Virus record (IMG/VR): IMGVR_UViG_3300026484_000007
Location: 62,001-126,000 of that record
DNA length: 64,000 bases
Reading direction: 5' to 3' (one strand)
Position 1 is the stretch's first letter. Every line of letters starts with the position of its first letter. A program made the translations under genes and the position numbers. The notes under the pieces were generated by a model that saw nothing but the letters and a program-made list of their open reading frames with translations, made no database searches and was not told the DNA's origin. This document shows positions 7,422 to 60,632 of this stretch, in pieces.

Positions 7422-7476
7422 GGGAAAGTGATCTAAAAAAGATCACTTTCCAGCTTTTTTTTGTCGTCAGAAAAAA
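7422..7476 (+). terminator. Hairpin + T-tract + GTCGTCAG-A6 motif
   Basis: ggaaagtgatc-N7-gatcactttcc then T8 gtcgtcag A6. Confidence 0.65.
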
Positions 7477-7601
7477 CTTGAGTTCCAGAACGTTGCGCTT
7501 CTATAGCTATCTAAAGATATATAGCAGTTCTAAAACTAATTTAGAACTCGTATATATCACTTGTATCTAAAAAAGATGCTACATTGAAAATCAAAGTTTT
7601 C
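7471..7601. repeat. Dispersed ~130-bp imperfect palindrome, copy 1
   Basis: Core agcagttctaaa..tttagaactcgtatatatc; arms match copies at 14165, 32705, 39776, 60478. Confidence 0.9.
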
Positions 7602-7677
7602 AACTAAAAATATTTTTAAAACAAAAATTTGGATAAATAAATTTTATCCAAATTTTTATAAAATTTAAGGAGCTAAT

Positions 7678-8532
7678 ATGGCTGATAATACTGTTAATAC
7701 TAATTATGTAACTGAAGATGAATTAAAAGCATTTGCTGAGCAAGTTCATGCATGTGTATTAAATACTATTGCTACAGAAGAAACATCTTATACTGAACTT
7801 GTAAAAGAATTCGTTGAATCTAAAGTTACTGAACTTGAAAATAAATTAGTTAATAACGAAGATTGGCTAAAAGCTAAAGAAACTATTGATTCTTTATTAG
7901 CAGTTTTCGATGAAAACACTGATGGTTCTTTAAGTGCTGAAGAACTTTTAACTAAAATCGGTGAATTCAAAGCTAATGTTGATGCGTTAAGTGCTAAAAT
8001 TGCTGACGTTGAATCTAAAATTGATGCAGGTCTTTCTGATTTAAACGCTAAAATTGCTGTAAATGAATCTACAATTGATGAAGTAACTTCTAAAGTTGAC
8101 GAAGCTTTAAATAACTATAATGATACTGTAGAAAAAGTTGCAACTATCGAAGGTTCTATTACTGACGTTAATGCTAGAATTGACGATGTTGAATCTAAAA
8201 TTGAGGCTGTAGCTCAAGCTGCTGCAGACGGTGTTAGTGAAGAACTTGAAAGCACAGTTGCTACTCTTAAAGAAGACATTGAAACTTTCAAAGCTAACGT
8301 AAATACTGTTGTTGATGAAGCGCAAGAAGAAGTTAAAACTAAAATAATTACTGAAGTTAAAACTGAAGTTTCTGCGATGTTCACTGGAATGCAAGAAGCG
8401 TTCGCTGCGTCTTGTGATGCTGCAAAAACAACTATTGAAGAAAGAATGGCTAATTTAAGATCAGCTTTCGGATTACCAGCTGCGGCTGATACAACTAATA
8501 CTTCTATAGATGGTGATGGTGCAGTAGTTTAA
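7678..8532 (+). CDS. Acidic coiled-coil protein, possibly structural
   Basis: AAGGAG RBS, Ala/Glu/Val-rich heptads. Confidence 0.6.
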   Translation: MADNTVNTNYVTEDELKAFAEQVHACVLNTIATEETSYTELVKEFVESKVTELENKLVNNEDWLKAKETIDSLLAVFDENTDGSLSAEELLTKIGEFKANVDALSAKIADVESKIDAGLSDLNAKIAVNESTIDEVTSKVDEALNNYNDTVEKVATIEGSITDVNARIDDVESKIEAVAQAAADGVSEELESTVATLKEDIETFKANVNTVVDEAQEEVKTKIITEVKTEVSAMFTGMQEAFAASCDAAKTTIEERMANLRSAFGLPAAADTTNTSIDGDGAVV

Positions 8533-8594
8533 TAACTACTCCCTCCCCTTCTTTTTTTGTCGTTAGAAAAAAACGAATCGAAAAAGGATCTTTT

Positions 8595-8930
8595 ATGGGA
8601 TATAAAAAATACGAAGTTCTTGTAAGAAAAATCAGTAAGACTGATATCGACGATGTAATTAAAATTTTTAAAAAAGCAATTAATACTAAACAAGAATCCG
8701 ATCCAGATACTTACTGGGCAGCAGGAATTTTTGATCTTAGAACTTTAAAAGAATTTATTATTTTCAGCGATAAAGCTGCAGAAATATTTAGTATTGATGA
8801 TGAATACGTCACAAAACATTATGAGAAAATTCCTGGCGTCATGTTTTTAGGTCAAAGGATTACTGATAGAATCCCTGATGAAATTATGGATAAAATCATT
8901 GAAGAATTGAAAGCGCGCGGAGTCGTCTGA
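8595..8930 (+). CDS. Hypothetical protein
   Basis: 111-aa ORF with AAGGA RBS. Confidence 0.6.
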   Translation: MGYKKYEVLVRKISKTDIDDVIKIFKKAINTKQESDPDTYWAAGIFDLRTLKEFIIFSDKAAEIFSIDDEYVTKHYEKIPGVMFLGQRITDRIPDEIMDKIIEELKARGVV

Positions 8931-9000
8931 AAAACAGTGATCCGCGGACGTTAATCAATCAAAGATACACAAAGATATAAAAGCAGTTCTAAAATTTCTA
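8929..9000. repeat. Dispersed palindrome family, left-half copy
   Basis: gatacacaaagatataaaagcagttctaaaa matches the left arm of copies at 39776 and 60478. Confidence 0.75.
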
Positions 9001-9004
9001 CGAA

Positions 9005-9050
9005 TTTTTTCTAACGACAAAAAAAGTGGATCCTTTTGGATCCACTTTTT
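9005..9050 (-). terminator. Hairpin + T7-GTCGTTAG-A6 between convergent genes
   Basis: aaaaagtggatccttttggatccacttttt, possibly bidirectional. Confidence 0.65.
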
Positions 9051-9095
9051 CTAACCTCTCTCACCGTCTCCTAAATTATTTAAAATTATTCTAAA

Positions 9096-10676
9096 TTATT
9101 TTACTAATTTATTTTTCATGATAGTCACGAACGAACTTAATTGTCTTTCTAAATCTACTTTATTCTGATCAATAGTATTAAAATCATCATCAACGAATAA
9201 ATTAAAATTTAATTTAATACTTAAATCTTTAGCTATAGCATTCAATATATCATCTACAGCAGCACTATCTCCAATTATTTCATAAAAATAATTAAACATT
9301 TCAAGATTTAAATATTCTTTAATGATATTAAAATTTTTCTTTTTTGAATTATTTTTGAAAAATTTATGATTTAATTTATGATAATAACTTTCTTTAGTAA
9401 AAGAATTTTTAGTAAATTTAGTGATAGTGTTATATAAAAAACTATGATCTAAAAAATTTATTTGATCTTTATTATACGCTCGCATAAAATCAAAATAATT
9501 TGGTTCAAAGAATGATTGAATGAATTCATCGTTATATACTGAAAAATAATCGTCTTTTAAGAATCTCTTATGTTTATTCAAGAATACAACTAACATTGAA
9601 TCAATTATGAAAGTATTCGTATTCAATTCATTACTATCATCAAACACTAAATTAAAATTTTCAGTAAATAAATTTTCTAATTGTTTAAAGAATCCAACTT
9701 TTACTTTACTAAGATTAGTAGCATAAAAACTAAATAAATTTTGATGAATTAAAGTTAAATACGAACTGAATATTGCTCTAAGAGTCATTGGATTTTTATT
9801 TTTAATCGCAGTAAACATTAAATACTTAAGAACTCTTTCAATGATTTGATCAGGAGTAATCATTAAAATATCATAATAAAATTCTCCAATTTTTGTCTTA
9901 CTATTGTATTTTACCAACCATTGTTCGATTAATGATTTAAGTGTTAAAAGAAATCTAGTTAATTCGGCTTGTCTTCCTAAGATCGAATAAAGATCTTTTA
10001 AGAATAATTCTAATGGATTTTTTGCTCTTTTGATGTTAGTAACTTCTTTTTCAGCTAAATACATCTTAGCGAATTCTTCGAGTACTTTTAAATAATAATG
10101 AAATGATACTAATGTCAATTTATTTACACCTTCATCGAACATCGTTAATTCAATATCATCTGTTAAATTTTTATAAATTTCATGATACATTAATTTATCT
10201 TCTTCAGATAAAAATTCATTATTTTCTTCTTTTCTTTTTAACTCTTTATCAATTTTTTCATAAATAAGATTTTTTATATGCTTATCTATTTTAACGAATT
10301 GCTCGATGGTTAATTGTATTTGATATTCATTTTCAGGTTTATTACCAAGAAGAACATCGAGGTTATTAAAAACAACATCTTTATCTAAAACAGAACTTAG
10401 TTCTTCGTAAATATAAGTTTCAATTTCGAAATCAAGATCATGCTCAACTAAGAAATTTTCTACGATTTCTTCAATCTTTTTATAATCGTATTTTAATTTT
10501 TTTTCTTTTTTATCTTTAAGACTAGCGTAAACGAGTTTAAGTTTTTCGTTTACTTTATCATAAGATTTATTTTCAGATTTATTTTCATTTGCCGTTTCCG
10601 GCATCTCTGACGTTTCTATGGATGTTTCATTAGTTGTCTGTACCTGATCCTGATTCTCCATCTTTAACCTCCTCAA
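9096..10676 (-). CDS. Hypothetical protein
   Basis: 526-aa ORF; likely start at MENQ behind GAGG. Confidence 0.7.
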   Translation of the reverse strand: MRRLKMENQDQVQTTNETSIETSEMPETANENKSENKSYDKVNEKLKLVYASLKDKKEKKLKYDYKKIEEIVENFLVEHDLDFEIETYIYEELSSVLDKDVVFNNLDVLLGNKPENEYQIQLTIEQFVKIDKHIKNLIYEKIDKELKRKEENNEFLSEEDKLMYHEIYKNLTDDIELTMFDEGVNKLTLVSFHYYLKVLEEFAKMYLAEKEVTNIKRAKNPLELFLKDLYSILGRQAELTRFLLTLKSLIEQWLVKYNSKTKIGEFYYDILMITPDQIIERVLKYLMFTAIKNKNPMTLRAIFSSYLTLIHQNLFSFYATNLSKVKVGFFKQLENLFTENFNLVFDDSNELNTNTFIIDSMLVVFLNKHKRFLKDDYFSVYNDEFIQSFFEPNYFDFMRAYNKDQINFLDHSFLYNTITKFTKNSFTKESYYHKLNHKFFKNNSKKKNFNIIKEYLNLEMFNYFYEIIGDSAAVDDILNAIAKDLSIKLNFNLFVDDDFNTIDQNKVDLERQLSSFVTIMKNKLVK

Positions 10677-13684: not shown

Positions 13685-14089
13685 ATGGCTTATCATTTTG
13701 GAAAAACATCATTAAAAAGAATGGAAGGTTTAGATAGTGATCTTATAAAGATCCTTAACCTTGCAATCAAAGAAACTAAGCAAGATTTTAGTGTTATTGA
13801 AGGTCTGCGAACTGCGGAACGACAATACGAATTATATCAAGAAGGTCAAAGTGAGCTTGATGGCTACGAAAGAAAATCAATGCATCAATTTGGAAAAGCA
13901 GTTGATATTGCTCCATACAAAGATGGAAAATTAGTATGGGGAATTGACGAAGATCCAAAAGCTTGGTTAGAAGTTGGAAGAGCGATGCTAAGAGCTGCTC
14001 GAAAATTAAATATATGTTTAGAATGGGGATTAACTTACAACATCGGTAATGGATACGATGCACCTCATTTTCAATTAAATGAAAAGTGA
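13685..14089 (+). CDS. Endolysin, M15 peptidase (L-Ala-D-Glu endopeptidase, T5-lys-like)
   Basis: EGLRT.ERQ..LY..G.S, SMH..GKAVD, DAPHFQL zinc-ligand motifs. Confidence 0.88.
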   Translation: MAYHFGKTSLKRMEGLDSDLIKILNLAIKETKQDFSVIEGLRTAERQYELYQEGQSELDGYERKSMHQFGKAVDIAPYKDGKLVWGIDEDPKAWLEVGRAMLRAARKLNICLEWGLTYNIGNGYDAPHFQLNEK

Positions 14090-14125
14090 TCTTTTAAAGA
14101 TCACTTTTTTTGTCGTTAGAAAAAA
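14083..14125 (+). terminator. Hairpin + T-tract + GTCGTTAG-A6
   Basis: aaagtgatcttttaaagatcacttt followed by the motif. Confidence 0.65.
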
Positions 14126-14164: not shown

Positions 14165-14312
14165 GAAAAACTTGTTTTTTAATGTAGCATCTATTTTCGA
14201 TACAAGCGATATATACGAGTTCTAAAATTTTCAGGATTTCTAAATCATTTTAGAACTCGTATATATCTTTGCGTATCCATAGAAGCGCAACGTTCTAGAA
14301 TCACTGTTTTTT
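14165..14312. repeat. Dispersed palindrome family, inverted copy with longer loop
   Basis: gatatatacgagttctaaaa..ttttagaactcgtatatatc; arms are the reverse complement of copy 1. Confidence 0.9.
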
Positions 14313-14342
14313 CTTAAACGAAATAATAAAAAGGAGAAATTT

Positions 14343-15455
14343 ATGGCAACAGAATCTACGAAGACCACAAAAACCACACCGACAAAAAGTTCTTCTCCAA
14401 TTTTATTACCTAATATATATACAAGTCGTTATACGAGTAGAATTGGTTTAATGGTTTTTGAATTATATAATAATTCTATTTATTTTTATATGGATTTAGA
14501 AGATGGTCAAATAATTGAAACTTTAAAAAGCATTTATTTATTTAAAGATGTAAAAGCTTTAAACGATCTTCTTGATCTCAATATCCCATTCGATAAATAC
14601 GAATTGGAAAATCCTGAATATTTAATGACTCCAATAGAAAAAATAAGATACGAGATTTCTTCGGTTACTCTCGAGGAATACTATCCAAACGAAGAAAATC
14701 CTCAGAATTGTTTTATTATTGAAAATCAAAACGACGTTATAACACGAGATGAATTAGAAGAAGAATTATTTCATAATAATGAAAATTATTATACTAAAGA
14801 TGAGATCGATGAAAAATTAATTGATCTTCAAAATAAAGTAAATGAATTATATCCTACGAAAGAATCTTTTTTAGATCTCAAAAATGAATTATATAATTAT
14901 TTAGATGAAAAACTTAATTTATTAGAAGATGATCTTCAAAAGATCGCTAATAAAGTTTTCGATGATCTCGACGATGAAATCAGTGAAAAGATTAGAGCAT
15001 CTTTTAAAGATCTTTTAACGACAGAATTTGCGAATCTTGCGTTTTCTCAAATTGATCCACAATTGTTTTTAAAAGAATTAGATTATTCTGAATTCAAAAC
15101 TTTCTTAGAACAATTAGCATTATCTTTATTAGGAAAATATTATTACGAATCTGAAGATTATGAATCAAATGATCTTATTTTGATTCGACATGATCTTAAT
15201 AGTACTTATCTTAATATAAATATTTATGAATACCAAGATGGAGAATATTGGAGTTTTTATCCTTCTTTTTCAACGCATGATAAAAATGTATTATTAATCA
15301 AAGGCGTAAAAGGAAAGAAAATTAGAGTTTTAATAGATAGATTAAAATTCGATGAATTAAATTCTGATATTTTATTGAATGCGAGATACTCGCCAGAAGA
15401 ATTAGCGAATATGTCTTATGAAGAACGATGGGCATTATTATTTAGAATTAAATAA
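14343..15455 (+). CDS. Hypothetical acidic protein, possibly virion-associated
   Basis: AAGGAG RBS, 370 aa. Confidence 0.6.
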   Translation: MATESTKTTKTTPTKSSSPILLPNIYTSRYTSRIGLMVFELYNNSIYFYMDLEDGQIIETLKSIYLFKDVKALNDLLDLNIPFDKYELENPEYLMTPIEKIRYEISSVTLEEYYPNEENPQNCFIIENQNDVITRDELEEELFHNNENYYTKDEIDEKLIDLQNKVNELYPTKESFLDLKNELYNYLDEKLNLLEDDLQKIANKVFDDLDDEISEKIRASFKDLLTTEFANLAFSQIDPQLFLKELDYSEFKTFLEQLALSLLGKYYYESEDYESNDLILIRHDLNSTYLNINIYEYQDGEYWSFYPSFSTHDKNVLLIKGVKGKKIRVLIDRLKFDELNSDILLNARYSPEELANMSYEERWALLFRIK

Positions 15456-15456
15456 T

Positions 15457-15566
15457 TTTAGAACTCGTATATATCCTTAGTATCCAAAAAAGATGCTACA
15501 TAGAAAATCAATGTTTTCTAAGAATTTTTTCTAACGACAAAAAAACTCTCGCATATGCGAGAGTTT
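15457..15566. repeat. Right-half palindrome copy plus hairpin-T7-GTCGTTAG terminator (minus strand)
   Basis: tttagaactcgtatatatcc..agatgctaca; aaactctcgcatatgcgagagttt hairpin. Confidence 0.8.
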
Positions 15567-27022: not shown

Positions 27023-27059
27023 TCTTTCTCCTTTTAATTTTTAATTTTTTTTGAAAAAT

Positions 27060-27170
27060 AAAAAGGATCTAAAAAAGATCCTTTAATAAAAAGGATCTAA
27101 AAAAGATCCTTTAATAAAAAGGATCTAAAAAAGATCCTTTAATAAAAAGGATCTAAAAAAGATCCTTTTT
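27060..27170. repeat. 28-bp tandem repeat x4 (aaaaaggatctaaaaaagatcctttaat)
   Basis: ggatct at 27065, 27093, 27121, 27149; each unit is a GATC-N7-GATC hairpin. Confidence 0.95.
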
Positions 27171-27177
27171 GACTAAG

Positions 27178-28932
27178 TTAAATAACTGGATTCCATTCAA
27201 TTTCAAAGTTATCTTTTTCAGATAGAATTCCTATGTCATCAATAAGTATACCTAAAACATCCGAAGGATCTTCATGAATTTTAAAAGCAATTTCATCGAA
27301 TCCTTGAATAAGTTCTTGATACACTTTTCTTAATACCGAATCTTTTCCATCTTTCATAAAATTACGAATCTCATTATAAAAATCTTTATCAATAATTAAT
27401 AGATTTCCTGATTCATCGTAAGTCAAAGTGTCTCTAGTTTCATCAGCAATTTCGACTCTAACTTCTAGATCTTCTTGATCTTCATATGCAGCTTCTGTTT
27501 CAATTACATTTGCCCATTGAATACTATGATATTGATGGTTTCCACTGATAAATAATGCAGCCCCAACAGGATGCATTTTTAAAGATATATTTTTGATCGT
27601 AATTTTAATTTTCCCAGATTTTTTTGGCTTATATTTATTATAAAGTCTTTTTAAATCTCCAGGAAATTTTTCAATTAAATCAAATAATTCCATTTGATTA
27701 ATATCATAAATACTTCTTAATTGAAGAACTTCTTTAATCTCTTCAAGAAAATCTTTTTCAGTTTGTCCTTGAAGGTTTGTAGCGATAGAAATAGATTCTT
27801 TTCTGTTTGCGTCTTTTCCTCCGAAAGCTCCGAATCCGTAACTAAGTAAATCCTTTGAATTTTTTGATCCATATGATTCATAGTCATATCCTGAATACAT
27901 TCCATATCCATAAAATGAATTTTCAATATTTTCAGGAATTACCATATCTTGTGGTTCGTATGATTCAAGGATTGCCTGCATAATTATTTCTAATTCTGGG
28001 ACACTATCTTGAATTCTAAATTTTTTTACTAACAGTTTAGATATTCTTTGAGTTTCTTGTCCAAAGAAAGCTTTAAATCTATTCGATGGTACAACAAATT
28101 CTTTATCTTGAAGAAGTCCTACCATAGTAGGAATTTCTTCAACTGTTCCAACGGCTCCTTTATCCTCATTAGTCGGATCCACCTGTTGGATATTAAAATA
28201 TCTACATTCTGTTGTAAATAGTTCAGCATCTTTATCACAATAAAGAACACTATCTACTTGATGTAAATCCTGTGCTTCTTTAACTCTAAAGATAACACCA
28301 GGATTAAGAGGATTGTTTCTAAGATCAGTTCCAGAGAACCCAAATCTTCCTGGGTGTCTATGAATTGACCCAACCTCTCCTTCGACGAATTTTACTTCGT
28401 ATCCTTTGTCAGTAAATAATTTTTTTGGAAATGCTTTAATAATTTTTTTAGCAATTTCCATCGATAAAGGTTTAATCTGTTCAGAAACTTGATTAACCTC
28501 TACAAGATTGAAATCTACGCTTCCAGTCGTAACTTTTTGTGGAAAATTAAAATATACCGTTGGAAACGTTAAAACTACAACTTCATTTTTATCATTTTTG
28601 ATTTTTATTTGCAGCGCTCTAAAGTGAAACTGAAATTCACTTCCGTGAGCAATTGGTAAACATTTTTCTTGAATTTTATTTAAAACTGCTTGTTTATGTC
28701 CTACGAATAAAAGATGATCATCTCTCGAACTCTCAGTTGGTGTACTATAAGATTTTGCTTGATAACCATAACTATTATCATAACTATTATCATAACTATT
28801 ATATGAACCTTTTGTATTTACTACATTCCCTGTATTCATTGTATTGATATTTCTCATGTTATTTCCTCCATCTTTTTTATTTTTTTTCTCTGCGTTTAAT
28901 AATGTTTTTTGTGTTAATTTATTTCTTGCCAT
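27178..28932 (-). CDS. JAB/MPN (JAMM) metallo-isopeptidase domain protein
   Basis: GSIHRHPGRFGFSGTD (HxH..SxxD), upstream Glu in HGSEFQF, PQKVTTGSV element typical of prokaryotic JABs. Confidence 0.75.
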   Translation of the reverse strand: MARNKLTQKTLLNAEKKNKKDGGNNMRNINTMNTGNVVNTKGSYNSYDNSYDNSYGYQAKSYSTPTESSRDDHLLFVGHKQAVLNKIQEKCLPIAHGSEFQFHFRALQIKIKNDKNEVVVLTFPTVYFNFPQKVTTGSVDFNLVEVNQVSEQIKPLSMEIAKKIIKAFPKKLFTDKGYEVKFVEGEVGSIHRHPGRFGFSGTDLRNNPLNPGVIFRVKEAQDLHQVDSVLYCDKDAELFTTECRYFNIQQVDPTNEDKGAVGTVEEIPTMVGLLQDKEFVVPSNRFKAFFGQETQRISKLLVKKFRIQDSVPELEIIMQAILESYEPQDMVIPENIENSFYGYGMYSGYDYESYGSKNSKDLLSYGFGAFGGKDANRKESISIATNLQGQTEKDFLEEIKEVLQLRSIYDINQMELFDLIEKFPGDLKRLYNKYKPKKSGKIKITIKNISLKMHPVGAALFISGNHQYHSIQWANVIETEAAYEDQEDLEVRVEIADETRDTLTYDESGNLLIIDKDFYNEIRNFMKDGKDSVLRKVYQELIQGFDEIAFKIHEDPSDVLGILIDDIGILSEKDNFEIEWNPVI

Positions 28933-29027
28933 AAGTTTCTCCTTGTTTTTTTAATTTTTTTTATTTTTTAAATTTCTTCGGTATTTATAATGCGCCCCAA
29001 AGATAAAGCTAAAGCTTGGCGCATGCA
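28933..29027 (-). promoter_or_regulatory. Shared leader A (GCGCC hairpin, TATAAATA, A-tracts, AAGGAG)
   Basis: Near-identical to 30719-30801 and 31974-32060. Confidence 0.8.
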
Positions 29028-29704: not shown

Positions 29705-30718
29705 TTATTCTCCTTCAGATTTAAACACAACACCTGGCAATGTTTTTTGCCAAAGCATTTTTGTAACTTCCATAGCTCCGTATGAAAGTTCCTTATATCT
29801 TCTGTGGATTATTTCACTAAACCACATTGAGTTCATATTAATTTTTGATAGGGTTTGCCATCCTCTATATGTGTTATTATCATGCGAACCCGTACAAACA
29901 TTATTTTCACGTGAATCGTGGTTTGCTTTTAAGTTTCCACTAAGATTTCCTGGTAATGAAATTCCTTGAATTCCTCCACCAGATGTTTTTATCGTTCCCC
30001 ATCCAAAATACGGAAGAACCATTCCTTTTGAAATAATTTGGAATGGAACTATAATTGATGGAATCACCGCCTTTCTTTCGATTTTAATTTTTCCCGAAAT
30101 TAACGCTAACGAAAAAACATCGTCGAAATTTTTTTCTTCTTCAACGACGCGACTTGATAGTTTTGCTGTTTCAGTAAAACTATTCCAAGTATACGCAGCG
30201 ATAATTGCATTCAATTCGATTGCTTTATTGTATTCTTCAAGATTTTTTTCGACTTCATTTAAGAATTCAAAAATCATTACAGTCCCTTTTGTGTTTAATA
30301 ATTTTTCTTTTTTTGGACTTTTTAAAATTGATAATAATGTTCCAGGATGCATTGGATTGATTAATAATTCATCTCCATCTACATCTGCAATAAAAAGCAT
30401 TCCTGCGAATTTATTCGTAGTATCCAATATTTGAATTCCGATTTCTAGTGCTTTTTCTAAAGTCACTTTTAATTTAAGAACTTTATCTGATACATTATCA
30501 TAAAATGTGCCTGCTGTAAAATACTCAATTGAAGAATACGAATCAAATACATCATTGTAATTTTTTACAACTTCTATGATCTTATTCCAATCGTTTTTAA
30601 TTGGGATAACGATGTCTCCCTTATCGTTAATTATTTCTAATCTTTCTGTGCTTTCTTCACTTCCGTTTCTAAAATCATTAAATTCTTCGTTTAACACTGC
30701 ATTAAAAAATTCAACCAT
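29705..30718 (-). CDS. Putative prokaryotic E2-like (UBC-fold) protein
   Basis: Only Cys lies in SGNL..NNVCTGS..GW, resembling the Prok-E2 N..VC.G site; flanked by E1 and JAB genes. Confidence 0.45.
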   Translation of the reverse strand: MVEFFNAVLNEEFNDFRNGSEESTERLEIINDKGDIVIPIKNDWNKIIEVVKNYNDVFDSYSSIEYFTAGTFYDNVSDKVLKLKVTLEKALEIGIQILDTTNKFAGMLFIADVDGDELLINPMHPGTLLSILKSPKKEKLLNTKGTVMIFEFLNEVEKNLEEYNKAIELNAIIAAYTWNSFTETAKLSSRVVEEEKNFDDVFSLALISGKIKIERKAVIPSIIVPFQIISKGMVLPYFGWGTIKTSGGGIQGISLPGNLSGNLKANHDSRENNVCTGSHDNNTYRGWQTLSKINMNSMWFSEIIHRRYKELSYGAMEVTKMLWQKTLPGVVFKSEGE

Positions 30719-30801
30719 AATTTCTCCTTGTTTTTTTAATTTTTTTATTTTTTTCCTTGGTATTTATAATGCGCCCCAAAGATAAGCTAAAGCTTGGCGC
30801 A
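30719..30801 (-). promoter_or_regulatory. Shared leader B
   Basis: Identical to leader C over ~85 nt. Confidence 0.8.
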
Positions 30802-31973: not shown

Positions 31974-32060
31974 AATTTCTCCTTGTTTTTTTAATTTTTT
32001 TATTTTTTTCCTTGGTATTTATAATGCGCCCCAAAGATAAGCTAAAGCTTGGCGCATGCA
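31974..32060 (-). promoter_or_regulatory. Shared leader C
   Basis: Identical to leader B. Confidence 0.8.
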
Positions 32061-32704: not shown

Positions 32705-32880
32705 AAAAAAACACGAGATCTTCCATTCCCTCTGCTATTAAAATATCAATCTTTAATATACGAGTTCTAAACTTTAGAACTCGTATATATCGCTTGTATC
32801 GAAAATAGATGCTACTTAAAAAATCAAGTTTTTTACAGTTTTTTCTAACGACAAAAAAACCCTCGCTATAAAAGCGAGGT
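32705..32880. repeat. Dispersed palindrome copy plus hairpin-T7-GTCGTTAG terminator of the topoisomerase operon
   Basis: atatacgagttctaaactttagaactcgtatat core; cctcgctataaaagcgagg hairpin. Confidence 0.85.
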
Positions 32881-36471: not shown

Positions 36472-36989
36472 TTTATCTCCTTTTTTAAAAACTCACTTGA
36501 ACCTAAAATTAATTTTTTTAATAAATTAACTGGATCAATATCTTTAGCTTCTATATATTTTAACTTATCAAATTCTTTTTCTAAAAAAGATAAATTAAAA
36601 TCATCCACAATTAATCCATATTCAATTTTATTATTTTTCATAAAATTTCTTATGGCTTTTTCTCTATTATTGATTTCGTCAATGTAATTAATATTCAATT
36701 TTTTTACTATTTCAAATAATTCTTTAATTTCATCTTCGATCGAATCTTTTATAGATTCTTTTAAGTACAACTTGTTGTTTTTTAATTCAAGAATACAAGA
36801 CCAAGAACTTGTAAGATAAATCTCAAAGCCTAAAAGATCACAGAATCTATTAAGAATTTCTACGTTTTGAGAAGTTTCTTTTTTTATAGATTCTAAATCA
36901 TATCCATACGATTTTCTATAATTTCCCCAAGGAATAATACAATCATCTAGATCCAAAAAAAGGATCTTTTTTAGATCTTTTTTAATCAT
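36468..36989 (-). CDS. HAD-superfamily (HAD_SAK-like) phosphatase
   Basis: LFLDLDDCI, LTSSW, LIVDD motifs. Confidence 0.72.
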   Translation of the reverse strand: MIKKDLKKILFLDLDDCIIPWGNYRKSYGYDLESIKKETSQNVEILNRFCDLLGFEIYLTSSWSCILELKNNKLYLKESIKDSIEDEIKELFEIVKKLNINYIDEINNREKAIRNFMKNNKIEYGLIVDDFNLSFLEKEFDKLKYIEAKDIDPVNLLKKLILGSSEFLKKEIK

Positions 36990-39775: not shown

Positions 39776-39942
39776 GAAAAACTCGTGATCCTAAAACGTT
39801 GCGCTTCATTAGATACACAAAGATATATAGCAGTTCTAAAAATTTTAGAACTGCTTTTATATCGCTTGTATCTAAAAAAGATGCTACGTAGAAAATCAAG
39901 TTTTTTCTAGTGACAAAAAAACTCTCGCGCTCGCGAGAGTTT
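39776..39942. repeat. Dispersed palindrome copy plus hairpin-T7-GTCACTAG terminator
   Basis: Full arms gaaaaact..agcagttctaaaa/ttttagaactgct..agttttttc; actctcgcgctcgcgagagt hairpin. Confidence 0.9.
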
Positions 39943-39952: not shown

Positions 39953-40213
39953 TTAAATTTCATTTAGTAAAGTATTTAATTCTTCTTCTTTTTCTTTAAT
40001 GATCTTTTGAAGATCATCTTCGTTTATCGTTCCGTATTTATCTAAAATATAAGATTCCATTTGTTGAATGTTTTGCTCAAGAACTCCAATGTTAATTTCG
40101 GTTTCTTGAATTTGCTTTTGAAGATTTTCTTTTTCTGCGTTGTATCTATTTAAGATCTCATCTAACTGAGCACTATCTATAGTGTTAGCATTGTTAGTAT
40201 TATCTGGTATCAT
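39953..40213 (-). CDS. Small coiled-coil protein
   Basis: AAGGAGG RBS. Confidence 0.6.
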   Translation of the reverse strand: MIPDNTNNANTIDSAQLDEILNRYNAEKENLQKQIQETEINIGVLEQNIQQMESYILDKYGTINEDDLQKIIKEKEEELNTLLNEI

Positions 40214-47238: not shown

Positions 47239-48108
47239 TTATTGATTTATAAGTCTTTTAAAATTTTTATTAATCTCCGATCTTAAACGTTGATAGTCCC
47301 AAAAGTTTAGAACGGTATATTTAATAAATTTATTTTCATCGTAATCTTCAAGATAATCGTTTTGAATGATACTGAATTCTTTTGATATAAAAAAATCGAA
47401 TTTAAAATCTTGAACATAGTATCTTTTAACCGAATTTTTATCAATGAATAAATGAACCATTTGATTCTTTTTTTCATCTATAAAAGAATCGATTATAGTT
47501 AATTCTAATTCATTAATAATTTCTTCATTTAACTCAGTTAAAAATGGATTAATCTTGTTTGTATCTTTTTTAGATCCTTTTGCTAAAGAATTAATTTTTT
47601 TATTTAAATCATCTTGTATGATTTTATTGATTTTTTCATTTAAGTTTTTCTGTTCCTTTTTATCAATTTTCGAAGCCTTAAATTTTTTAATTTCTTGACC
47701 GACTCTATTTGCAACTAACTCTCTCGTTCTAATATCGATGAATTGCTCTTGTTCTTTTTTAGCAACTTCTTCTAATTCTTTAATTTTATTTAATTCTTGA
47801 TAAAAATTAAAAAAGTCGCTTCTTATATCGTATTTTTTTATATCATTTTCGATAATTATCATTTTTAAATAATTTAAAAATAATAAAGGATTTTTTTCAA
47901 TTTCCTGATTGAATAATAAATTATATTTTGATAAAAATTGAACAATTTTCGGTCTTCTCCATAATGCTTCAAATAAATAAATAATATTCCTTTTGACCTC
48001 TTTTTCTGACGACAAAAAAACGTCAGGAATAGATTCCTGACGTGATGTAATATAATCAATTAAATCTCTTACCGTAACTTTAGCTTTCGAAGATTTATTT
48101 TTGGCCAT
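47239..48108 (-). CDS. Hypothetical protein
   Basis: GGAG RBS; contains an internal terminator-like motif. Confidence 0.65.
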   Translation of the reverse strand: MAKNKSSKAKVTVRDLIDYITSRQESIPDVFLSSEKEVKRNIIYLFEALWRRPKIVQFLSKYNLLFNQEIEKNPLLFLNYLKMIIIENDIKKYDIRSDFFNFYQELNKIKELEEVAKKEQEQFIDIRTRELVANRVGQEIKKFKASKIDKKEQKNLNEKINKIIQDDLNKKINSLAKGSKKDTNKINPFLTELNEEIINELELTIIDSFIDEKKNQMVHLFIDKNSVKRYYVQDFKFDFFISKEFSIIQNDYLEDYDENKFIKYTVLNFWDYQRLRSEINKNFKRLINQ

Positions 48109-52842: not shown

Positions 52843-52888
52843 TTTTTTTCTGACGACAAAAAAAAGTGATCTTTAAAAGATCACTTTC
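52843..52888 (-). terminator. Hairpin + T7-GTCGTCAG-A7
   Basis: aaagtgatctttaaaagatcacttt hairpin next to the motif. Confidence 0.65.
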
Positions 52889-55332: not shown

Positions 55333-57495
55333 CTAAAGCTCTTCATTTTCATCTTCGAATTTCATTCCGAAAACATGAAGGGCATTATTTAGAGTTTTCT
55401 TAGTCACTGAATTATATTTATCTTTAAGATAATATTCACCATCTCTAATATATTTAATAATAAAGTTTTGCTTTTCATCTAAAGCATCAGATTTAATTGT
55501 ATAAATTTCTTTTAGAACAGCATTATCTTCTTTATGCGCTAATAACGCTGCAAGTGATTGCCAACTTACGTGAGCTCCACCACCTTTTTTTCTACCTCTT
55601 ACTGGCTGACCAGTGATTTTTGAATACGCACTTGTAAAACTAACACTATTAAATTTTCCAAAACTTGTATGATGTAATTTTAGCATATAATTCCAAGAGC
55701 TAAATAACATCAACTCTGTTTCATTATAATCATTAAATGGATCTTTAAATCCATAATTTTTTCTAAGCCATTCTAATAATTCAGATGAATATTTGATTTT
55801 TTGCTTACCTATATTTAGGTCGAATCTTTTCGCGTATGGTTTAATAAAAGTATTCATAAGCTCTTTATATGAAATATTCGGGAAGTTTGGGACATATAAA
55901 TAAAAATTGTTTTTATTTATATCATTTATAAATAATTTCGCAAATTCTTCATTATCTAAATTATTAATGATATTTTCAACATCTTGATAATAATCAAGAT
56001 CATATTTTTTTATAAAATTTTCATTTATAAAATTAATTTTTTCTTTTAGAGTTTCTATCGTTTCCGATCCTTCTAAGATCTTTTTAACAGTATTCTCTAC
56101 ATCGATAATGATTTTTGAAACCGCTAATTCAAATACAACTCCCCAGTTATTTCTTCCAGGAATTCCTAATGAATTAAATATCATATCAAAAGGTTTTCCA
56201 GTGCTTGGATCTTTTGGCATTAACTCATCTGGAATAATCATTGCAATAGTTGCTTTTCCAGCAAATAAGTTAGTGAATTTATCACCTCTTGTTGTGTTTA
56301 AATAAATCTTTGAATCTAATTCAATTAGAAAATCCATATCATTAAATTCTTTGATTAAGTATTCTTCCATCAACATTTGCTTATAATGCTTATATTGTTT
56401 TTCCATTGATAAATACTGTGAATAAATTTGCTCAGTTAATTCTTTAGCTTTTTCTTTATTCATTCCAATATTTAAAAATGAATCATAAACATTTTTCTTC
56501 TTTTTAACATTAGCTATAATTAAATCTTCTAATTCATTAATTATACCTCTTGTGTAAATATATTTTTCATCAAGTTTTCTTATTTCTTTAATAAGATCTT
56601 TTAAAGATTCGTCCGTAAGTTCTTGATCCATATCTATCGATCTTAATTCTCTAAGAATATCTTCATTAAATATATGAAGTTTCATAGTAACAACATCGGA
56701 ATTTAATAATCCATCAATTTTTTTAGTAAAAAATTTAGATGGAGTTTTATCAGCATTGATAATTTCTGATGAAAAGTGTTTACTAGTATCAATTTCAAGA
56801 TACTTGATATAATCATCTTTCACATGCATTCCAACATAAGGTAGATATGTTTCAATTTCTTTTTCTTCATCTCTTACTATTTTAAAATATTTCCAATGTT
56901 TTAGAATTGGAATATAAGTTTTTTTAATTACAGTCTTTTGAGCTTTTTTTGAAAAACTTTCAGAAATAACAATTGCATCATCTGCGTTGTATCCAAAGAA
57001 TGAAGTGAATAAAATGTTTGCTCTGTATCCTATTTTAGGTAATTTATTTTCAATATTCATTCCGGTATAATCATAAAGAACTTCTCCTTTTTTGAAGAAT
57101 TTTTTATCTATTTTATATTTTAAATCTAATGAATACTCGATTAACTTTCTACCTTCTGGCAAATGTTTAGTAATCATTTTTTTCTGATTTTTATAATAAA
57201 TTACTAAAATATTATCATCGTTATGTAACACAATTCCATCATCTTCCGCGAATTCCACGAAAGGAGATTGGATTGTACTAATCTTTTGAAATTCTTTATC
57301 AATCATAAAAGGAGTATCAACATTCTTTGATAACATTGGTTGAACTCCTTGTTTGTAAGACATATTTAATCTATTATTGTCTACTGTTTGTGCGAAAGGT
57401 ACGAAAATTTCGATTTGAGGACTGAAAATTGTTTTTACTAACTTTTGTGTTTTTTCCGTTTCTTTTTTCATCTCTTTTGCTATTTCTTTTGCCAT
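55333..57495 (-). CDS. Multisubunit RNA polymerase beta-like subunit, C-terminal part
   Basis: FGYNADDAIVISE, GDKF..FAGKAT, NSLGIPGRNN.G, YMLKLHH, YSKITGQPVRGRKKGGG. Confidence 0.92.
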   Translation of the reverse strand: MAKEIAKEMKKETEKTQKLVKTIFSPQIEIFVPFAQTVDNNRLNMSYKQGVQPMLSKNVDTPFMIDKEFQKISTIQSPFVEFAEDDGIVLHNDDNILVIYYKNQKKMITKHLPEGRKLIEYSLDLKYKIDKKFFKKGEVLYDYTGMNIENKLPKIGYRANILFTSFFGYNADDAIVISESFSKKAQKTVIKKTYIPILKHWKYFKIVRDEEKEIETYLPYVGMHVKDDYIKYLEIDTSKHFSSEIINADKTPSKFFTKKIDGLLNSDVVTMKLHIFNEDILRELRSIDMDQELTDESLKDLIKEIRKLDEKYIYTRGIINELEDLIIANVKKKKNVYDSFLNIGMNKEKAKELTEQIYSQYLSMEKQYKHYKQMLMEEYLIKEFNDMDFLIELDSKIYLNTTRGDKFTNLFAGKATIAMIIPDELMPKDPSTGKPFDMIFNSLGIPGRNNWGVVFELAVSKIIIDVENTVKKILEGSETIETLKEKINFINENFIKKYDLDYYQDVENIINNLDNEEFAKLFINDINKNNFYLYVPNFPNISYKELMNTFIKPYAKRFDLNIGKQKIKYSSELLEWLRKNYGFKDPFNDYNETELMLFSSWNYMLKLHHTSFGKFNSVSFTSAYSKITGQPVRGRKKGGGAHVSWQSLAALLAHKEDNAVLKEIYTIKSDALDEKQNFIIKYIRDGEYYLKDKYNSVTKKTLNNALHVFGMKFEDENEEL

Positions 57496-57513: not shown

Positions 57514-58734
57514 TTATAAATTTTTTAATTTAAGTCTACCATATTCATTTACTAACGTTTGAGTTGTAAACACTACATTAGCTCCAACGTTTGCCGCCGA
57601 TACACTAATTGGACAAAGAATTCCTTGTGCACTAGAATCATTTCTCTGCCAAGATTTAGGCAATCTTCCATCATTAATAACACTAATATCTTGAGATACT
57701 TTATTTATTAATGGTAATGCGTAAGGAATACTGATATCATATAAATTTCCTCTATGAAGATTATTTGTAAAACCAGATGTCATAATTACTTTTTGATTCA
57801 TTGTAATTAAAAAGTTTTGACCGTTTTTATCTATTACTCCATAAAGTAATCTTAAATAAGATTCAAAAATCGGTTTAATTAAATACTCAGAATGAATAAT
57901 TCTTCTATTATGAATATCAGACATATCTATTTTTTCTCCAGTTAAAAATAACTCGATGATTTTCCAAACGATATTTTTTATTCCTCTAAATCCATAGAAA
58001 TCTTCAAATAGTTCGTGATAAAAATCTAAAATTAAAAATGTATCAATCCATTTAACAAGATCGATATCATCGAAAAAAGATTCTTTATGGAAACCCAAAA
58101 ATTTTACAAATTTTCTTTTATCTCCAAGAGTGGTTTCTTTAGTATGAATTAAACCATTTTGATAAAGTTCTTCAAGTTTATCTTCATCATCTTTAAAGAT
58201 CACTCTTAAGAATAAATCTAATTCTATTTTTTTATAATTAAAAAATACAATTCTTTCAATTTTCTTTTTGCTTTTATTAGCAACATGAAAATCAAATGTA
58301 AAATTATACATTGGATTTAAATTTGCATAAATTTTATTTTTAATTACTTTTGCATCTGGTTCCGACATAACCCTATCAATAGGAGCTTTTTCAAGCATTA
58401 AAATTGGAACGTAAAGAGCGTTGTTTAAAGTATAATAATTTTTTTGAATCAATTTAGGCACAAAGAAACTAAACTCTCTTGAAAAGTTTTTGTATTCTTG
58501 ATAAATATAATATTCATCTTGATAGGTAATAAAATCTCCGAGGTATGGAGATATATTACTTTTCTTTTCAATTAACACTTTATATTCTGGATCAATCAAT
58601 TTAATTTTATTAAAAATTTCGTGAACCGTCTTTTCGATCTTTTGATGATCAACTTCTCTCCACTCGTGTAAATGCATAAAATTTTTATCGCTTTCTGCCG
58701 TTTTATAAACATTTTCGTATACAATTGTATTCAT
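57514..58734 (-). CDS. RNA polymerase beta-like subunit, N-terminal part
   Basis: DIHNRRI..EY, GILCPISVS..NVG (cf. GRICPIETPEGPNIG); adjacent to the C-terminal part. Confidence 0.72.
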   Translation of the reverse strand: MNTIVYENVYKTAESDKNFMHLHEWREVDHQKIEKTVHEIFNKIKLIDPEYKVLIEKKSNISPYLGDFITYQDEYYIYQEYKNFSREFSFFVPKLIQKNYYTLNNALYVPILMLEKAPIDRVMSEPDAKVIKNKIYANLNPMYNFTFDFHVANKSKKKIERIVFFNYKKIELDLFLRVIFKDDEDKLEELYQNGLIHTKETTLGDKRKFVKFLGFHKESFFDDIDLVKWIDTFLILDFYHELFEDFYGFRGIKNIVWKIIELFLTGEKIDMSDIHNRRIIHSEYLIKPIFESYLRLLYGVIDKNGQNFLITMNQKVIMTSGFTNNLHRGNLYDISIPYALPLINKVSQDISVINDGRLPKSWQRNDSSAQGILCPISVSAANVGANVVFTTQTLVNEYGRLKLKNL

Positions 58735-58809
58735 TGTCCTTCCTTTCTTTATTTTAATTATTTCAACTTGATTAGTATTATTTCTTTAAAATCTTTTTTT
58801 TAGATTTTT

Positions 58810-60444
58810 TTATATTTTAATCTTATTAGTTCTTCTTTTAATAAGCTGTGCCGGCTGAGAATTCTTTTTTAATAATGGAAAATAAATAGTGAACTTCATT
58901 GGTTTTTCTGGATCAGAAACCAATTTAACCTGATTGTACTCAAGCAAAACTTCATTCTCTTTTATTTCATTGATATATTGCTCAATTTTTCCACCCTCAT
59001 GTAATTCTGCTATGTACTTATCCAGAATTTCTTTTAAGATTAAAAAATCATTAATCTTTTCAACCCAGAATTGTTCTTCGTTTTCGTAGTTTCTATTTAT
59101 GAAATCTTTAAAAGATTCTCTAAAATATTTTCTGGGAAGAAAATCTAAAACCAATCTTTCTGTTTTTTTATCTAAATGATAGACTCCGTATTTGTCTTTT
59201 TTATTCAGGTATTCGAAAAAATTATATAAAAAATGTTTTCCGTGAGTTCTTTGATATTCCATAACTTCATAATTATAATAACTTGATGGAATTTCTTTCT
59301 TGAACATTTTAAAAAAGTCGTCCGAATGATAAATATTAGACACGTTCATCAAAGAAATATCTCCTCTCATATTATAATTCTTTTTCAAATACGACGTAAA
59401 TGTAGTTACCATAAATCGTTTTTCAAATTTATTTTTGATTATATTTCTAAGTGTCTCCGAAAAGAATTTCAAAATTTTCGCTGGATTATGTAATCTAATT
59501 TTTATTTTTTTAGATTTTATGTATTTATAATTTTCATGATTCTTAAACTCTGGATAATTCAATAAAGTACTCGTAAATTTTTTCATCGGTGTAGGATAAT
59601 TCATTGTATAAATTGATTTTTTTAAAGTAATTTTATTTATACTAAAGTTTATTCTACTCGGAATGATATTAGTAAAAAGATAAATTTTTCCGAATAATAA
59701 TTCAAATATATTAACCGCCTTTTTGATTCTTCTAATCATAAAAGGATTAGCATGAAGCTGATAATTTATTTGATCGGGCGCTATATGAATAGCTTTAAGT
59801 AAAAGATCAATATTCTTTCTGCTGTTTTCATCAAAGAGATTTTCGTTTTTTAAATACTCTTGGATCTTATTAGGATCTGATATAAAAAAGTATATAAAAT
59901 AATTAAACGAAAAAGATCGAATATTCATAAAGAAATGAAATTTTTCATCTATGTACTTTCTGAACTCTTTTTTATCTTTTAAATTTTCAGGTAAAGTATC
60001 TTCAAATAAATAATACACAAATGTTTCAAATATATTCAATCCTTCTCTATTTTGCAAAAAATTTCCTGTGCGGTCAGCAAACTCATTCAGATCTAAAAAA
60101 GATCTTAATTCTAAATTAATAAAAGAAATTTTCTTTCCATTTTTATCTTTAATTTCCATCTCGTTGAATAAAATTTCGAAAAGTCTCATATATCCAAAGA
60201 ACAAATAAAACACTTCATTGTGTGTAATTGATTCCATTTGAATTTTTAAGAAATTCTTAAATTCAAAACTGAAATAATTAAATAATGTTTTTAAAAAGGG
60301 ATCTTTAATAGATCCTTTATTCTCTTCAAAACTCTTTTTTAAAGTTTTAATTAAAACCGGCAATGATTCTTTAAAATTCTTTTTTGCCTTCGCAACTTCT
60401 CCATACGGCATCTGAATTATTTTTATTCTTTTTCTTTTAGCCAT
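58810..60444 (-). CDS. Hypothetical basic protein between RNAP genes
   Basis: 544 aa, AAGGAG RBS. Confidence 0.7.
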   Translation of the reverse strand: MAKRKRIKIIQMPYGEVAKAKKNFKESLPVLIKTLKKSFEENKGSIKDPFLKTLFNYFSFEFKNFLKIQMESITHNEVFYLFFGYMRLFEILFNEMEIKDKNGKKISFINLELRSFLDLNEFADRTGNFLQNREGLNIFETFVYYLFEDTLPENLKDKKEFRKYIDEKFHFFMNIRSFSFNYFIYFFISDPNKIQEYLKNENLFDENSRKNIDLLLKAIHIAPDQINYQLHANPFMIRRIKKAVNIFELLFGKIYLFTNIIPSRINFSINKITLKKSIYTMNYPTPMKKFTSTLLNYPEFKNHENYKYIKSKKIKIRLHNPAKILKFFSETLRNIIKNKFEKRFMVTTFTSYLKKNYNMRGDISLMNVSNIYHSDDFFKMFKKEIPSSYYNYEVMEYQRTHGKHFLYNFFEYLNKKDKYGVYHLDKKTERLVLDFLPRKYFRESFKDFINRNYENEEQFWVEKINDFLILKEILDKYIAELHEGGKIEQYINEIKENEVLLEYNQVKLVSDPEKPMKFTIYFPLLKKNSQPAQLIKRRTNKIKI

Positions 60445-60477
60445 TTTCTCTCCTTATTTTTTTTAATTTTTTTCTTC

Positions 60478-60632
60478 GAAAACTTGTGTTTCCAGAACGT
60501 TAAGCATCATTGGATACACAAAGATATATAGCAGTTCTAAAAATTTTAGAACTGCTTTTATATCGCTTGTATCTAAAATAGATGCTACGTGGAAAATCAA
60601 AGTTTTTACAGTTTTTTCTAGCGACAAAAAAA
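60478..60632. repeat. Dispersed palindrome copy plus T7-GTCGCTAG-A6 motif
   Basis: Close match to the 39776 copy. Confidence 0.9.

What the first reader, a model, noticed from the sequence alone, without database searches (positions are those of the whole stretch)
7471..60607. Dispersed ~130-bp imperfect palindrome family (7 copies including two half-copies)
Seen: intergenic copies at 7471, 8929 (left half), 14165 (inverted), 15457 (right half), 32705, 39776 and 60478. Each full copy folds end to end: GAAAAAC..GATAC..GATATA(TAGC/TACG)AGTTCTAAA-loop-TTTAGAACT(GCT/CGTA)..TATC..GTATC..GTTTTT. Arm variants (gcag/cgag) are mixed between copies and loop length varies, and every copy sits next to the terminator motif. 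No transposase is seen in the window. Inference: iterated replication origins or enhancers analogous to baculovirus hrs, a REP/MITE-like element, recombination or packaging sites, or a structured ncRNA.
Basis: partly seen in the sequence, partly recalled or inferred. Interest (0 to 1): 0.75.

Follow-up and report, generated by a model that had tools for sequence, protein, structure and literature searches.

The report
Repeated back-to-back promoter cassette, jumbo phage
An uncultured 273-kb hydrothermal-vent phage carries about 31 copies of a repeated intergenic cassette that most likely holds two promoter-like boxes placed back to back just after a terminator; it resembles the promoter/terminator cassettes of T4-like phages rather than a structured RNA or a transposon.

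Summary
The repeat family is real: all seven window copies are confirmed. The whole 272,602-bp phage genome holds 24 double and about 9 single copies, all intergenic, and the family was found in no other record searched.

The "folds end to end" reading is only partly right. One copy folds well, but across 22 copies only 14 invariant inner pairs are kept. The left and right arms vary independently: 68.5% of positions pair, against 68.4% in shuffles. A selected RNA or cruciform hairpin is therefore not supported.

Each double copy is an A arm and a B arm meeting at AGTTCTAAA / TTTAGAACT. About 14 further single sites carry the same box plus an AT-rich TAGATATTTAAT-like box. All 14 point at a downstream gene or at a hairpin-rich RNA, and in six the ATG lies 60-62 nt away. 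The phage encodes its own multisubunit RNA polymerase genes and no sigma-70-like factor was found.

Best explanation (confidence about 0.5): a stop-to-start regulatory cassette made of a terminator hairpin, the motif T7-GTCGTTAG-A6, two diverging promoters and a ribosome-binding site, spread and reshuffled by recombination.

No match to five transposase or recombinase Pfam families was found. No transcription data exist.

The parts
7470..7601 (+). Double copy in the order arm A, core (7526-7548), arm B. Arm B faces the gene at 7678-8532.
7423..7475 (+). Terminator hairpin (7423-7451) followed by the motif T8-GTCGTCAG-A6, directly upstream of the copy at 7470.
8929..8993 (+). Single A arm (half copy) that ends at the core. 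It lies between convergent genes and overlaps the stop codon of the gene at 8595-8930.
9005..9045 (-). Motif and terminator hairpin of the minus-strand gene 9096-10676, beside the half copy.
14105..14125 (+). Motif T7-GTCGTTAG-A6 after the hairpin of gene 13685-14089.
14165..14313 (-). Double copy, inverted: on the + strand it reads arm B, a 22-nt spacer, then arm A. Arm A faces the gene at 14343-15455.
15456..15518 (+). Single B arm (half copy) that starts 2 nt after the stop codon of gene 14343-15455. Read outward it runs into the reverse-complement motif (15525-15545) and the hairpin at 15545-15565.
32705..32835 (+). Hybrid double copy: a short 's'-class arm facing the gene at 32095-32667 (minus strand), the core at 32760-32785, then arm B.
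32839..32879 (-). Motif and terminator hairpin of the gene at 32893-34296.
39776..39907 (+). Double copy A-core-B (inner palindrome 39829-39855). Arm A faces the gene at 36989-39742 (minus strand).
39901..39942 (-). Motif variant GTCACTAG and the terminator hairpin at 39919-39942, belonging to the gene at 39953-40213.
60478..60607 (+). Double copy A-core-B. Arm A faces the 544-aa ORF at 58810-60444 (minus strand). Two relatives have neither the ORF nor the copy at this junction.
60612..60632 (-). Motif variant GTCGCTAG, downstream of the RNA polymerase beta'-like gene at 60685-62697.

Best explanation
The element is the central part of a repeated 'stop-to-start' intergenic regulatory cassette of an uncultured jumbo phage that carries its own multisubunit RNA polymerase genes.

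Read in the direction of transcription, a cassette has these parts:
1. A terminator hairpin with a T-run.
2. The invariant motif GTCGTTAG-A6.
3. One arm read inward.
4. The core AGTTCTAAA-(spacer)-TTTAGAACT.
5. The other arm read outward.
6. An A-rich spacer, then the ribosome-binding site and ATG.

Each arm read outward from the core carries TTTTAGAAC, about 16 nt, then a TATCTAA(T/A)-type AT-rich box. This is the same layout as the phage's single-arm promoter-like sites, so the palindrome would be two promoters back to back. One promoter would drive the next gene through a conserved leader of about 60 nt. The other would fire back toward the upstream terminator. Copies have spread between intergenic regions, in either orientation, and are continually reshuffled by short-patch recombination.

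Shown here: the anatomy, copy number, positions and orientations, the lack of covariation, the mosaicism, and the absence of the family elsewhere.

Inferred, not shown: promoter activity, which polymerase reads the boxes, and the mechanism of spread.
For: 1. The half-site occurs alone in about 14 's' sites with the consensus TTTTAGAACTGC-N9-TTAGATAT(A/T)TAA(A/T)TAGCA. All 14 point along the local gene strand. Six have the ATG 60-62 nt from TTTAGAAC. Others are followed by hairpin-rich RNAs (z = -8.1 and -10.2), the first ending in a hairpin followed by a T-run.
2. Single B arms sit in the same position. At genome 4701 the order is terminator, motif, TTTTAGAAC, B leader, RBS, with the ATG at 62 nt. 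At genome 186317 the ATG is at 90 nt.
3. A profile built only from 's' sites matches nine of the 22 A arms (the TTTAGATATC variant) through the AT-rich box, at E = 0.003-0.015.
4. In double copies one arm faces an RBS and ATG (24 arms) and the other faces the upstream terminator (18 arms). A and B take the gene side about equally, 11 against 13. At the divergent junction near 188.3 kb the two arms face the two diverging genes.
5. The genome has split beta/beta' RNA polymerase genes at two loci and no sigma-70 region 2 match. RNAP-encoding jumbo phages are reported to have a phage-specific, roughly 10-nt AT-rich early-promoter motif near -10 that can be found bioinformatically (PMC7598289).
6. 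Apart from the ribosome-binding site, only two motifs are strongly enriched upstream of genes: the TTTAGAAC family and GTCGTTAG.
7. Similarity between copies runs from the terminator to the RBS. The arms are mosaic: Mantel r = -0.04, and all four variant combinations occur between blocks 10-40 bp apart. Two relatives have 55-86 nt where this genome has the element plus an extra 544-aa ORF. This is the pattern described for PeSL cassettes (PMC2839356, PMC4122927).
Against: 1. There are no transcript data. No RNA run holding the phage was found.
2. B arms match the 's' profile only over TTTTAGAACTGC, so their -10-like box is an eye alignment.
3. Eighteen arms would fire into an upstream terminator, and two half copies (window 8929 and 15457) face no gene. 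This looks wasteful unless the short antisense RNAs matter or those arms are relics.
4. The downstream genes are a functional mix: a DNA polymerase part, terminase large subunit, thymidylate kinase, radical SAM. That does not look like one temporal class.
5. The promoter-like box is only weakly recognisable in two relatives.
6. A sigma-70-like TTGAAA-N16-TAGCAT reading inward in arm B is an alternative start site.
Confidence: 0.5

Rival explanations
1. A selfish, MITE-like palindromic repeat that has spread through the phage genome and has no role of its own, or only an accidental one.
For: The ends are inverted-repeat-like (GAAAAACT ... AGTTTTTC). Both orientations occur relative to transcription. 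There are about 31 copies at 75-95% identity, confined to this one genome. Two relatives have an empty junction.
Against: No match to five transposase or recombinase Pfam families (Y1, TnpB zinc ribbon, rve, DDE_Tnp_1, resolvase) was found in the genome. The element is absent from 185,579 representative prokaryote genomes, so no host source is evident. No target-site duplication can be defined. Homology extends beyond the palindrome into the terminator motif and the RBS spacer. The same half-site occurs alone, correctly oriented, 60-62 nt before start codons. Contigs of a ~99%-identical strain break at the same three loci and none bridges an empty site.
Confidence: 0.17
2. A binding platform for a dimeric phage protein, acting as an operator, enhancer, replication or recombination site as baculovirus hrs do. 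The 21-bp perfect palindrome AGTTCTAAAA-N-TTTTAGAACT would be the site.
For: The inner palindrome is the only invariant paired part. Function would be independent of orientation, as observed. Twenty of 24 spacers are 3 or 14 nt, which differ by about one helical turn.
Against: Spacers of 1, 5, 10 and 22 nt also exist. The 14-nt class looks like an 11-bp duplication of the core unit, so its constant length may reflect common descent. About 14 sites work with a single half-site. No candidate binding protein was identified. There is no evidence for an origin, such as a skew change at the copies.
Confidence: 0.15
3. A transcribed long hairpin in the 5' UTR. Transcripts would start upstream, at the GTCGTTAG motif or at a sigma-70-like TTGAAA-N16-TAGCAT in arm B. 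The hairpin would act as an attenuator, an RNase III site or a stability element.
For: Single copies fold strongly on both strands (-44.5 and -47 kcal/mol, z about -9). The inner stem scores as terminator-like. A sigma-70-like hit reads inward in arm B.
Against: There is no compensatory change. Pairing equals the shuffled expectation, and RNAalifold reports zero covariation. Nine of 24 copies mix GCAG and CGAG, which mismatch in the stem. Loop length is free. Rfam gives no hit.
Confidence: 0.1

Closest known systems
PeSL (promoter-early stem-loop) cassettes of T4-like phages (Arbiol et al. 2010, PMC2839356; Comeau et al. 2014, PMC4122927)
   Same: Both are roughly 100-bp repeated composite units that fill the gap from an upstream stop codon to the next Shine-Dalgarno sequence. 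Both combine a terminator stem-loop with a promoter. Both occur many times per large phage genome, are linked to insertion of extra ORFs relative to relatives, and are proposed substrates for homologous recombination.
   Different: The phage here is not T4-like. The promoter box is not the sigma-70 consensus. The promoter part is doubled into a 130-bp imperfect palindrome that occurs in either orientation. An extra invariant motif, GTCGTTAG-A6, follows the terminator. Mini-circles and promoter activity have not been tested here.
Early-promoter motifs of RNA-polymerase-encoding jumbo phages such as phiKZ and AR9 (review PMC7598289)
   Same: Both are phage-specific, bioinformatically detectable conserved AT-rich boxes of about 10 nt upstream of genes, in phages that encode split beta/beta' polymerases.
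   Different: This phage is very distant from known ones: the best tblastn hit of a beta-like subunit is 27% identity over 42% of the query. The box comes with an upstream TTTTAGAAC element. In most copies it is arranged as an inverted pair with conserved leaders of about 60 nt.
Baculovirus homologous regions (hrs)
   Same: Both are dispersed imperfect palindromes in an AT-rich large viral genome, and an orientation-independent role is possible.
   Different: From established knowledge, hrs are tandem arrays of about 30-bp palindromes bound by IE-1 that serve as enhancers and origins. Here copies are mostly single, the two arms are distinct conserved types, and single half-sites sit at promoter distance from start codons. 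No binding or origin data exist.
REP/BIME/REPIN elements and MITEs
   Same: Both are short palindromic intergenic repeats, often next to terminators, present in many copies.
   Different: No RAYT or Y1 transposase, or other transposase family tested, was found. There is no target-site duplication. The unit is longer than a REP. Homology extends into flanking regulatory signals.

Membership tests
PeSL-type promoter/terminator cassette | [quoted passage not shown] | tested here: met
   All 31 loci are intergenic. Similarity runs from the terminator to the RBS.
PeSL-type promoter/terminator cassette | Contains a stem-loop that can terminate upstream transcription | tested here: met
   A hairpin plus T7 lies next to 7 of 7 window copies and about 22 of 31 genome copies. 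Termination itself was not assayed.
PeSL-type promoter/terminator cassette | Contains a sigma-70-like early promoter (-35/-10 consensus) | tested here: not met
   The consensus scan found no sigma-70-type site in the copy at 39776. It found only an inward TTGAAA-N16-TAGCAT in arm B of the copy at 7471. The conserved boxes are TTTTAGAAC and TATCTAA(T/A).
PeSL-type promoter/terminator cassette | Marks insertion, deletion or replacement points between related phages | tested here: inconclusive
   One informative junction shows the element plus a 544-aa ORF here against 55-86 nt in two relatives. A ~99%-identical strain shows no difference at three loci.
MITE / non-autonomous transposon | Terminal inverted repeats with a flanking target-site duplication | tested here: inconclusive
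   The ends are inverted-repeat-like, but they grade into A/T runs shared with the flanks. No duplication can be defined.
MITE / non-autonomous transposon | A cognate transposase in the same genome or in the host | tested here: not met
   PF01797, PF07282, PF00665, PF01609 and PF00239 gave no match in the genome. The element is absent from representative prokaryote genomes. The host is unknown.
REP/BIME (RAYT-associated) | A RAYT (Y1 transposase) and REP units of about 20-40 bp | tested here: not met
   No Y1_Tnp match was found. The arms are about 65-80 nt.
Structured non-coding RNA | Base pairs maintained by compensatory changes across copies | tested here: not met
   There are 0 covarying pairs among 14 predicted. 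The end-to-end structure pairs in 68.5% of cells against 68.4% in shuffles. Rfam gave no hit.
Baculovirus-hr-like enhancer/origin | Tandem arrays of imperfect palindromes bound by a viral dimeric activator and active as enhancer or origin | not testable with these tools
   Only 4 loci hold 1.5-2 tandem units and the rest are single. Binding, enhancer and origin activity all need experiments.
Jumbo-phage virion-RNAP early promoter | A conserved AT-rich box of about 10 nt centred near -10 of mapped early transcription start sites | tested here: inconclusive
   The conserved box is present at a fixed distance from start codons. No start sites or timing data exist.

The most novel reading that the evidence does not exclude
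The cassette could be a self-propagating, orientation-free bidirectional promoter module whose 'backward' arm is functional. In 18 loci that arm would make a short RNA of about 70-100 nt ending at the upstream hairpin. That RNA would contain the exact complement of the 21-nt motif T7-GTCGTTAG-A6, which marks about 40 gene junctions. It would then be a genome-wide antisense or insulator system that couples termination and re-initiation in a phage with its own RNA polymerases.
Probability: 0.1. Interest if true: 0.8.

Novelty: new variant of a known kind. Interest (0 to 1): 0.45.

Why it matters
Transcription signals of the RNA-polymerase-encoding jumbo phages are known for only a few cultured phages. 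This uncultured vent lineage offers a clear candidate promoter box and a candidate stop/restart motif, both readable from sequence alone. If the reading is right, it extends the 'mobile regulatory cassette' idea (PeSL) beyond T4-like phages. It would also show a new form, an inverted promoter pair that works in either orientation and recombines freely between loci. In practice, it gives coordinates for designing transcript-end mapping, in vitro transcription and recombination (mini-circle) tests.

Tried and rejected
- Rfam search of the window at gathering thresholds: no hit. Rfam E-value search of three 's'-rich loci: only hits far below threshold.
- tRNA scans: none found.
- Megablast of 16 kb against GenBank phages: no match.
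- tblastn of a beta-like RNAP subunit: only 27% identity over 42% of the query.
- Element signature in IMG/VR: 0 other contigs.
- Element signature in JGI metagenomes: only this genome's own contig plus single chance hits. One of these, L096, was read and is coding sequence.
- Element signature in representative prokaryote genomes: 2 single chance hits with no support from the element profile.
- The search for related loci with the beta' subunit in IMG/VR: nothing.
- Element profile against relatives L031-L034: no hit. These relatives carry their own, different repeated hairpin cassettes.
- The 's' promoter profile is only weakly recognisable in the relatives, so clade-wide conservation of the box is not claimed.
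- Sequencing runs: only DNA runs hold the phage, so no transcription evidence is available.
- Laying contigs of four DNA runs on a 5.9-kb stretch with three copies: contigs break at the repeats, and the apparent joints are cross-mapping of other copies. Nothing could be learned beyond copy number (about 21x depth) and the absence of a bridged empty site.
- The constant 14-nt spacer was considered as evidence for helical phasing. This was set aside because it can be explained by an 11-bp duplication of the core unit.
- Annotation of element-adjacent genes: most are ORFans and the named ones are a functional mix, so no gene class could be tied to the element.


Full report
**Source and setting.** The window is bases 62,001-126,000 of a 272,602-bp virus record that CheckV rates 97% complete. 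GC content is about 26%. The DNA runs that hold it are labelled hydrothermal vent metagenomes. Genes are densely packed. They include split beta and beta'-like RNA polymerase subunits (window 55333-57495, 60685-62697 and 63471-63986), topoisomerase II, an RNA ligase/kinase and an HNH endonuclease. A second beta/beta'-like set lies at 218-231 kb. No sigma-70 region 2 match was found. The phage is far from any deposited phage: megablast found nothing, and tblastn gave at best 27% identity over 42% of the query. Metagenomic relatives reach only 55-63% identity in the beta' subunit.

**Checking the observation.** Every stated copy is present. The signature GATATA-N4-AGTTCTAAA occurs 8 times in the window against 0.06 expected. 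Genome-wide, an nhmmer profile finds 31 loci, all between genes. There are 24 double elements and about 9 single arms. In the source run, assembler depth over a copy is about 664 against about 31 for the flanks, which fits some 20 copies. The family occurs nowhere else that I could search:
- IMG/VR: no other contig.
- JGI metagenomes: only this genome's own contig, Ga0256837_1000001, plus chance single hits.
- One genome for each of 185,579 prokaryote species: two single chance hits with no profile support.

**Anatomy.** A double element is not a simple palindrome. It joins two distinct, separately conserved arm types at the core AGTTCTAAA-(spacer)-TTTAGAACT:
- Arm A carries an invariant AACGTT.
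- Arm B carries an invariant AGATGCTAC.
- The spacer is 3 nt in 13 copies and 14 nt in 7. Spacers of 1, 5, 10 and 22 nt also occur.
- The copy at window 32705 has a short 's'-type arm in place of A.

Across the 22 A/B copies the picture is different:
- RNAalifold keeps only 14 inner pairs. All are invariant and none covaries.
- For a 63-pair end-to-end structure, 68.5% of cells pair. When the 3' letters are dealt out again among copies, the figure is 68.4 +/- 0.4% (216 of 500 shuffles as high).
- Nine of 24 copies combine GCAG on one side with CGAG on the other.

Pairing therefore comes from the common ancestry of the two arms, not from selection on each copy. With no Rfam hit either, I reject the structured-RNA reading and any obligatory cruciform.

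**What the half-site looks like.** The box TTTTAGAACTGC also occurs alone at about 14 's' sites. There it is followed by TTAGATAT(A/T)TAA(A/T)TAGCA.
- All 14 point along the local gene strand.
- Six have the start codon 60-62 nt from TTTAGAAC, after a short A-rich leader and a ribosome-binding site.
- Others are followed by GC-rich multi-hairpin RNAs (z = -8.1 and -10.2), the first of which ends in a hairpin followed by a T-run.

This is the layout of a promoter. Reviews of RNAP-encoding jumbo phages state that each has its own conserved AT-rich box of about 10 nt near -10 of early genes, and that it can be found by sequence analysis (PMC7598289).

The A and B arms, read outward from the core, have the same layout: TTTTAGAAC, about 16 nt, then TATCTAA(T/A).
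- A profile built only from 's' sites reaches nine of the 22 A arms (the TTTAGATATC variant) through that box, at E = 0.003-0.015. It reaches the other A arms and the B arms only over the first box.
- Single B arms sit exactly where a promoter should. At genome 4701 the order is terminator, motif, TTTTAGAAC, B leader and RBS, with the ATG at 62 nt. At genome 186317 the ATG is at 90 nt.

**Context.** About 40 intergenic sites carry a hairpin followed by T7-GTCGTTAG-A6. The motif is always co-oriented with the genes. It is followed by one of three things: a double or single element (about 22 loci), an 's' site, or directly the RBS and ATG 22-43 nt away. Apart from the ribosome-binding site, GTCGTTAG and the TTTAGAAC family are the only strongly enriched upstream words.

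In double elements one arm faces an RBS and ATG (24 arms, mostly at 85-140 nt). The other faces the reverse-complement motif and the upstream hairpin (18 arms at 60-107 nt). Nine arms face another copy in tandem arrays. A and B take the gene side about equally, 11 against 13, so orientation relative to transcription is free. At the divergent junction near 188.3 kb the two arms face the two diverging genes.

Similarity between copies extends from the terminator motif through the A-rich spacer to the ribosome-binding site. The repeated unit is therefore the whole stop-to-start gap.

**Evolutionary behaviour.**
- Distances between copies computed on the A arms do not correlate with distances on the B arms (Mantel r = -0.04, p = 0.64).
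- All four combinations of variants occur between blocks only 10-40 bp apart. The copies are mosaics, as expected from frequent short-patch recombination.
- At the one junction that can be compared, two relatives have 55-86 nt between the beta' gene and the next gene. This phage has the element plus an extra 544-aa ORF with no recognisable family.
- In a ~99%-identical strain from another study, contigs break at the same three copies and none bridges an empty site.
- No Y1/RAYT, TnpB, rve, DDE or resolvase gene exists in the genome.

**Interpretation.** The best-supported reading is a repeated regulatory cassette: a terminator, a conserved stop/restart motif, and two promoter-like boxes back to back, spread and homogenised by recombination. 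I put this at about 0.5, because promoter activity, the polymerase involved and the role of the backward arm are all inferred.

The rivals are:
- A selfish MITE-like repeat (0.17).
- A protein-binding operator or hr-like site (0.15).
- A transcribed 5'-UTR hairpin (0.10).

The closest known system is the PeSL cassette of T4-like phages (PMC2839356, PMC4122927). It works like one, but it fails the sigma-70 promoter criterion, and its promoter part is an inverted pair. I therefore call it a new variant of a known kind, not a member.

**Limits.** No RNA data exist for this phage. The B-arm -10-like box rests on an alignment by eye. The promoter box is only weakly visible in two relatives. The downstream genes are a functional mix.

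Noticed in passing
genome 53450-53545 (-), 215620-215712 (-) with a near-duplicate at about 216470-216560 (-), and 128600-128700 (-), 174850-174935 (-); all outside the window (loci L027, L053, L054): GC-rich multi-hairpin RNAs of about 85-105 nt lie directly downstream of single 's' promoter-like sites. The first ends in a hairpin followed by a T-run. Fold z-scores are -8.1 and -10.2, and there is no Rfam or tRNA match. They are candidate phage small RNAs.
   Followed up: partly
about 40 intergenic sites genome-wide; in the window 7454-7475, 8552-8574, 9005-9025, 14105-14125, 15525-15545, 32839-32859, 39901-39921, 48005-48020, 52845-52864, 60612-60632: The invariant motif T7-GTCGTTAG-A6 always follows a variable hairpin and is always co-oriented with the genes. 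In several places it lies only 22-43 nt before the next ATG with no other signal between them. It may be a combined terminator and restart (promoter) signal for one of the phage polymerases.
   Followed up: partly
window 58810-60444 (-): A 544-aa ORF with no Pfam or PHROG match is inserted, together with an element copy, between the beta'-like gene and the next conserved gene. Two relatives (L031, L034) have 55-86 nt there.
   Followed up: partly
window 27057-27196: Four to five tandem copies of a 28-nt unit, each a GGATCT-A6-AGATCC hairpin, follow the gene at 27178-28932. This is a stack of terminator-like hairpins. GATC-centred hairpins are also the common terminator form in relative L034.
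   Followed up: no
window 28936-29022, 30715-30801, 31970-32056: An 87-nt upstream region, including the RBS and a GC-rich hairpin (GCGCCCCAAAG...CTTGGCGC), is repeated before three consecutive minus-strand genes. Two of the copies are 100% identical. This looks like a recent local duplication of gene starts.
   Followed up: no
window 2-7398: There are very long repetitive ORFs (more than 1669 aa, then 574 aa) built from degenerate 54-nt periodic repeats. They are probably a coiled-coil fibre-like protein.
   Followed up: no
genome 18560-18615 (outside the window): Five iterations of AATCCTATA (a 9-10-nt period) lie in a 570-bp non-coding stretch at a strand switch. The arrangement is iteron-like and could mark an origin.
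   Followed up: no
genome-wide orientation of the 22 A/B copies: Sixteen of 22 copies read A to B on the + strand whatever the local gene direction (two-sided binomial p about 0.05). This is a weak hint that orientation follows the genome strand rather than transcription.
   Followed up: no
genome 22100, 30950, 221960 and the element-free sites 20740, 70580, 193380: A further conserved leader, AAACGAAGCC-A5-GGAT(C/T)TTTTATG, immediately precedes several start codons. It is unexplained.
   Followed up: no
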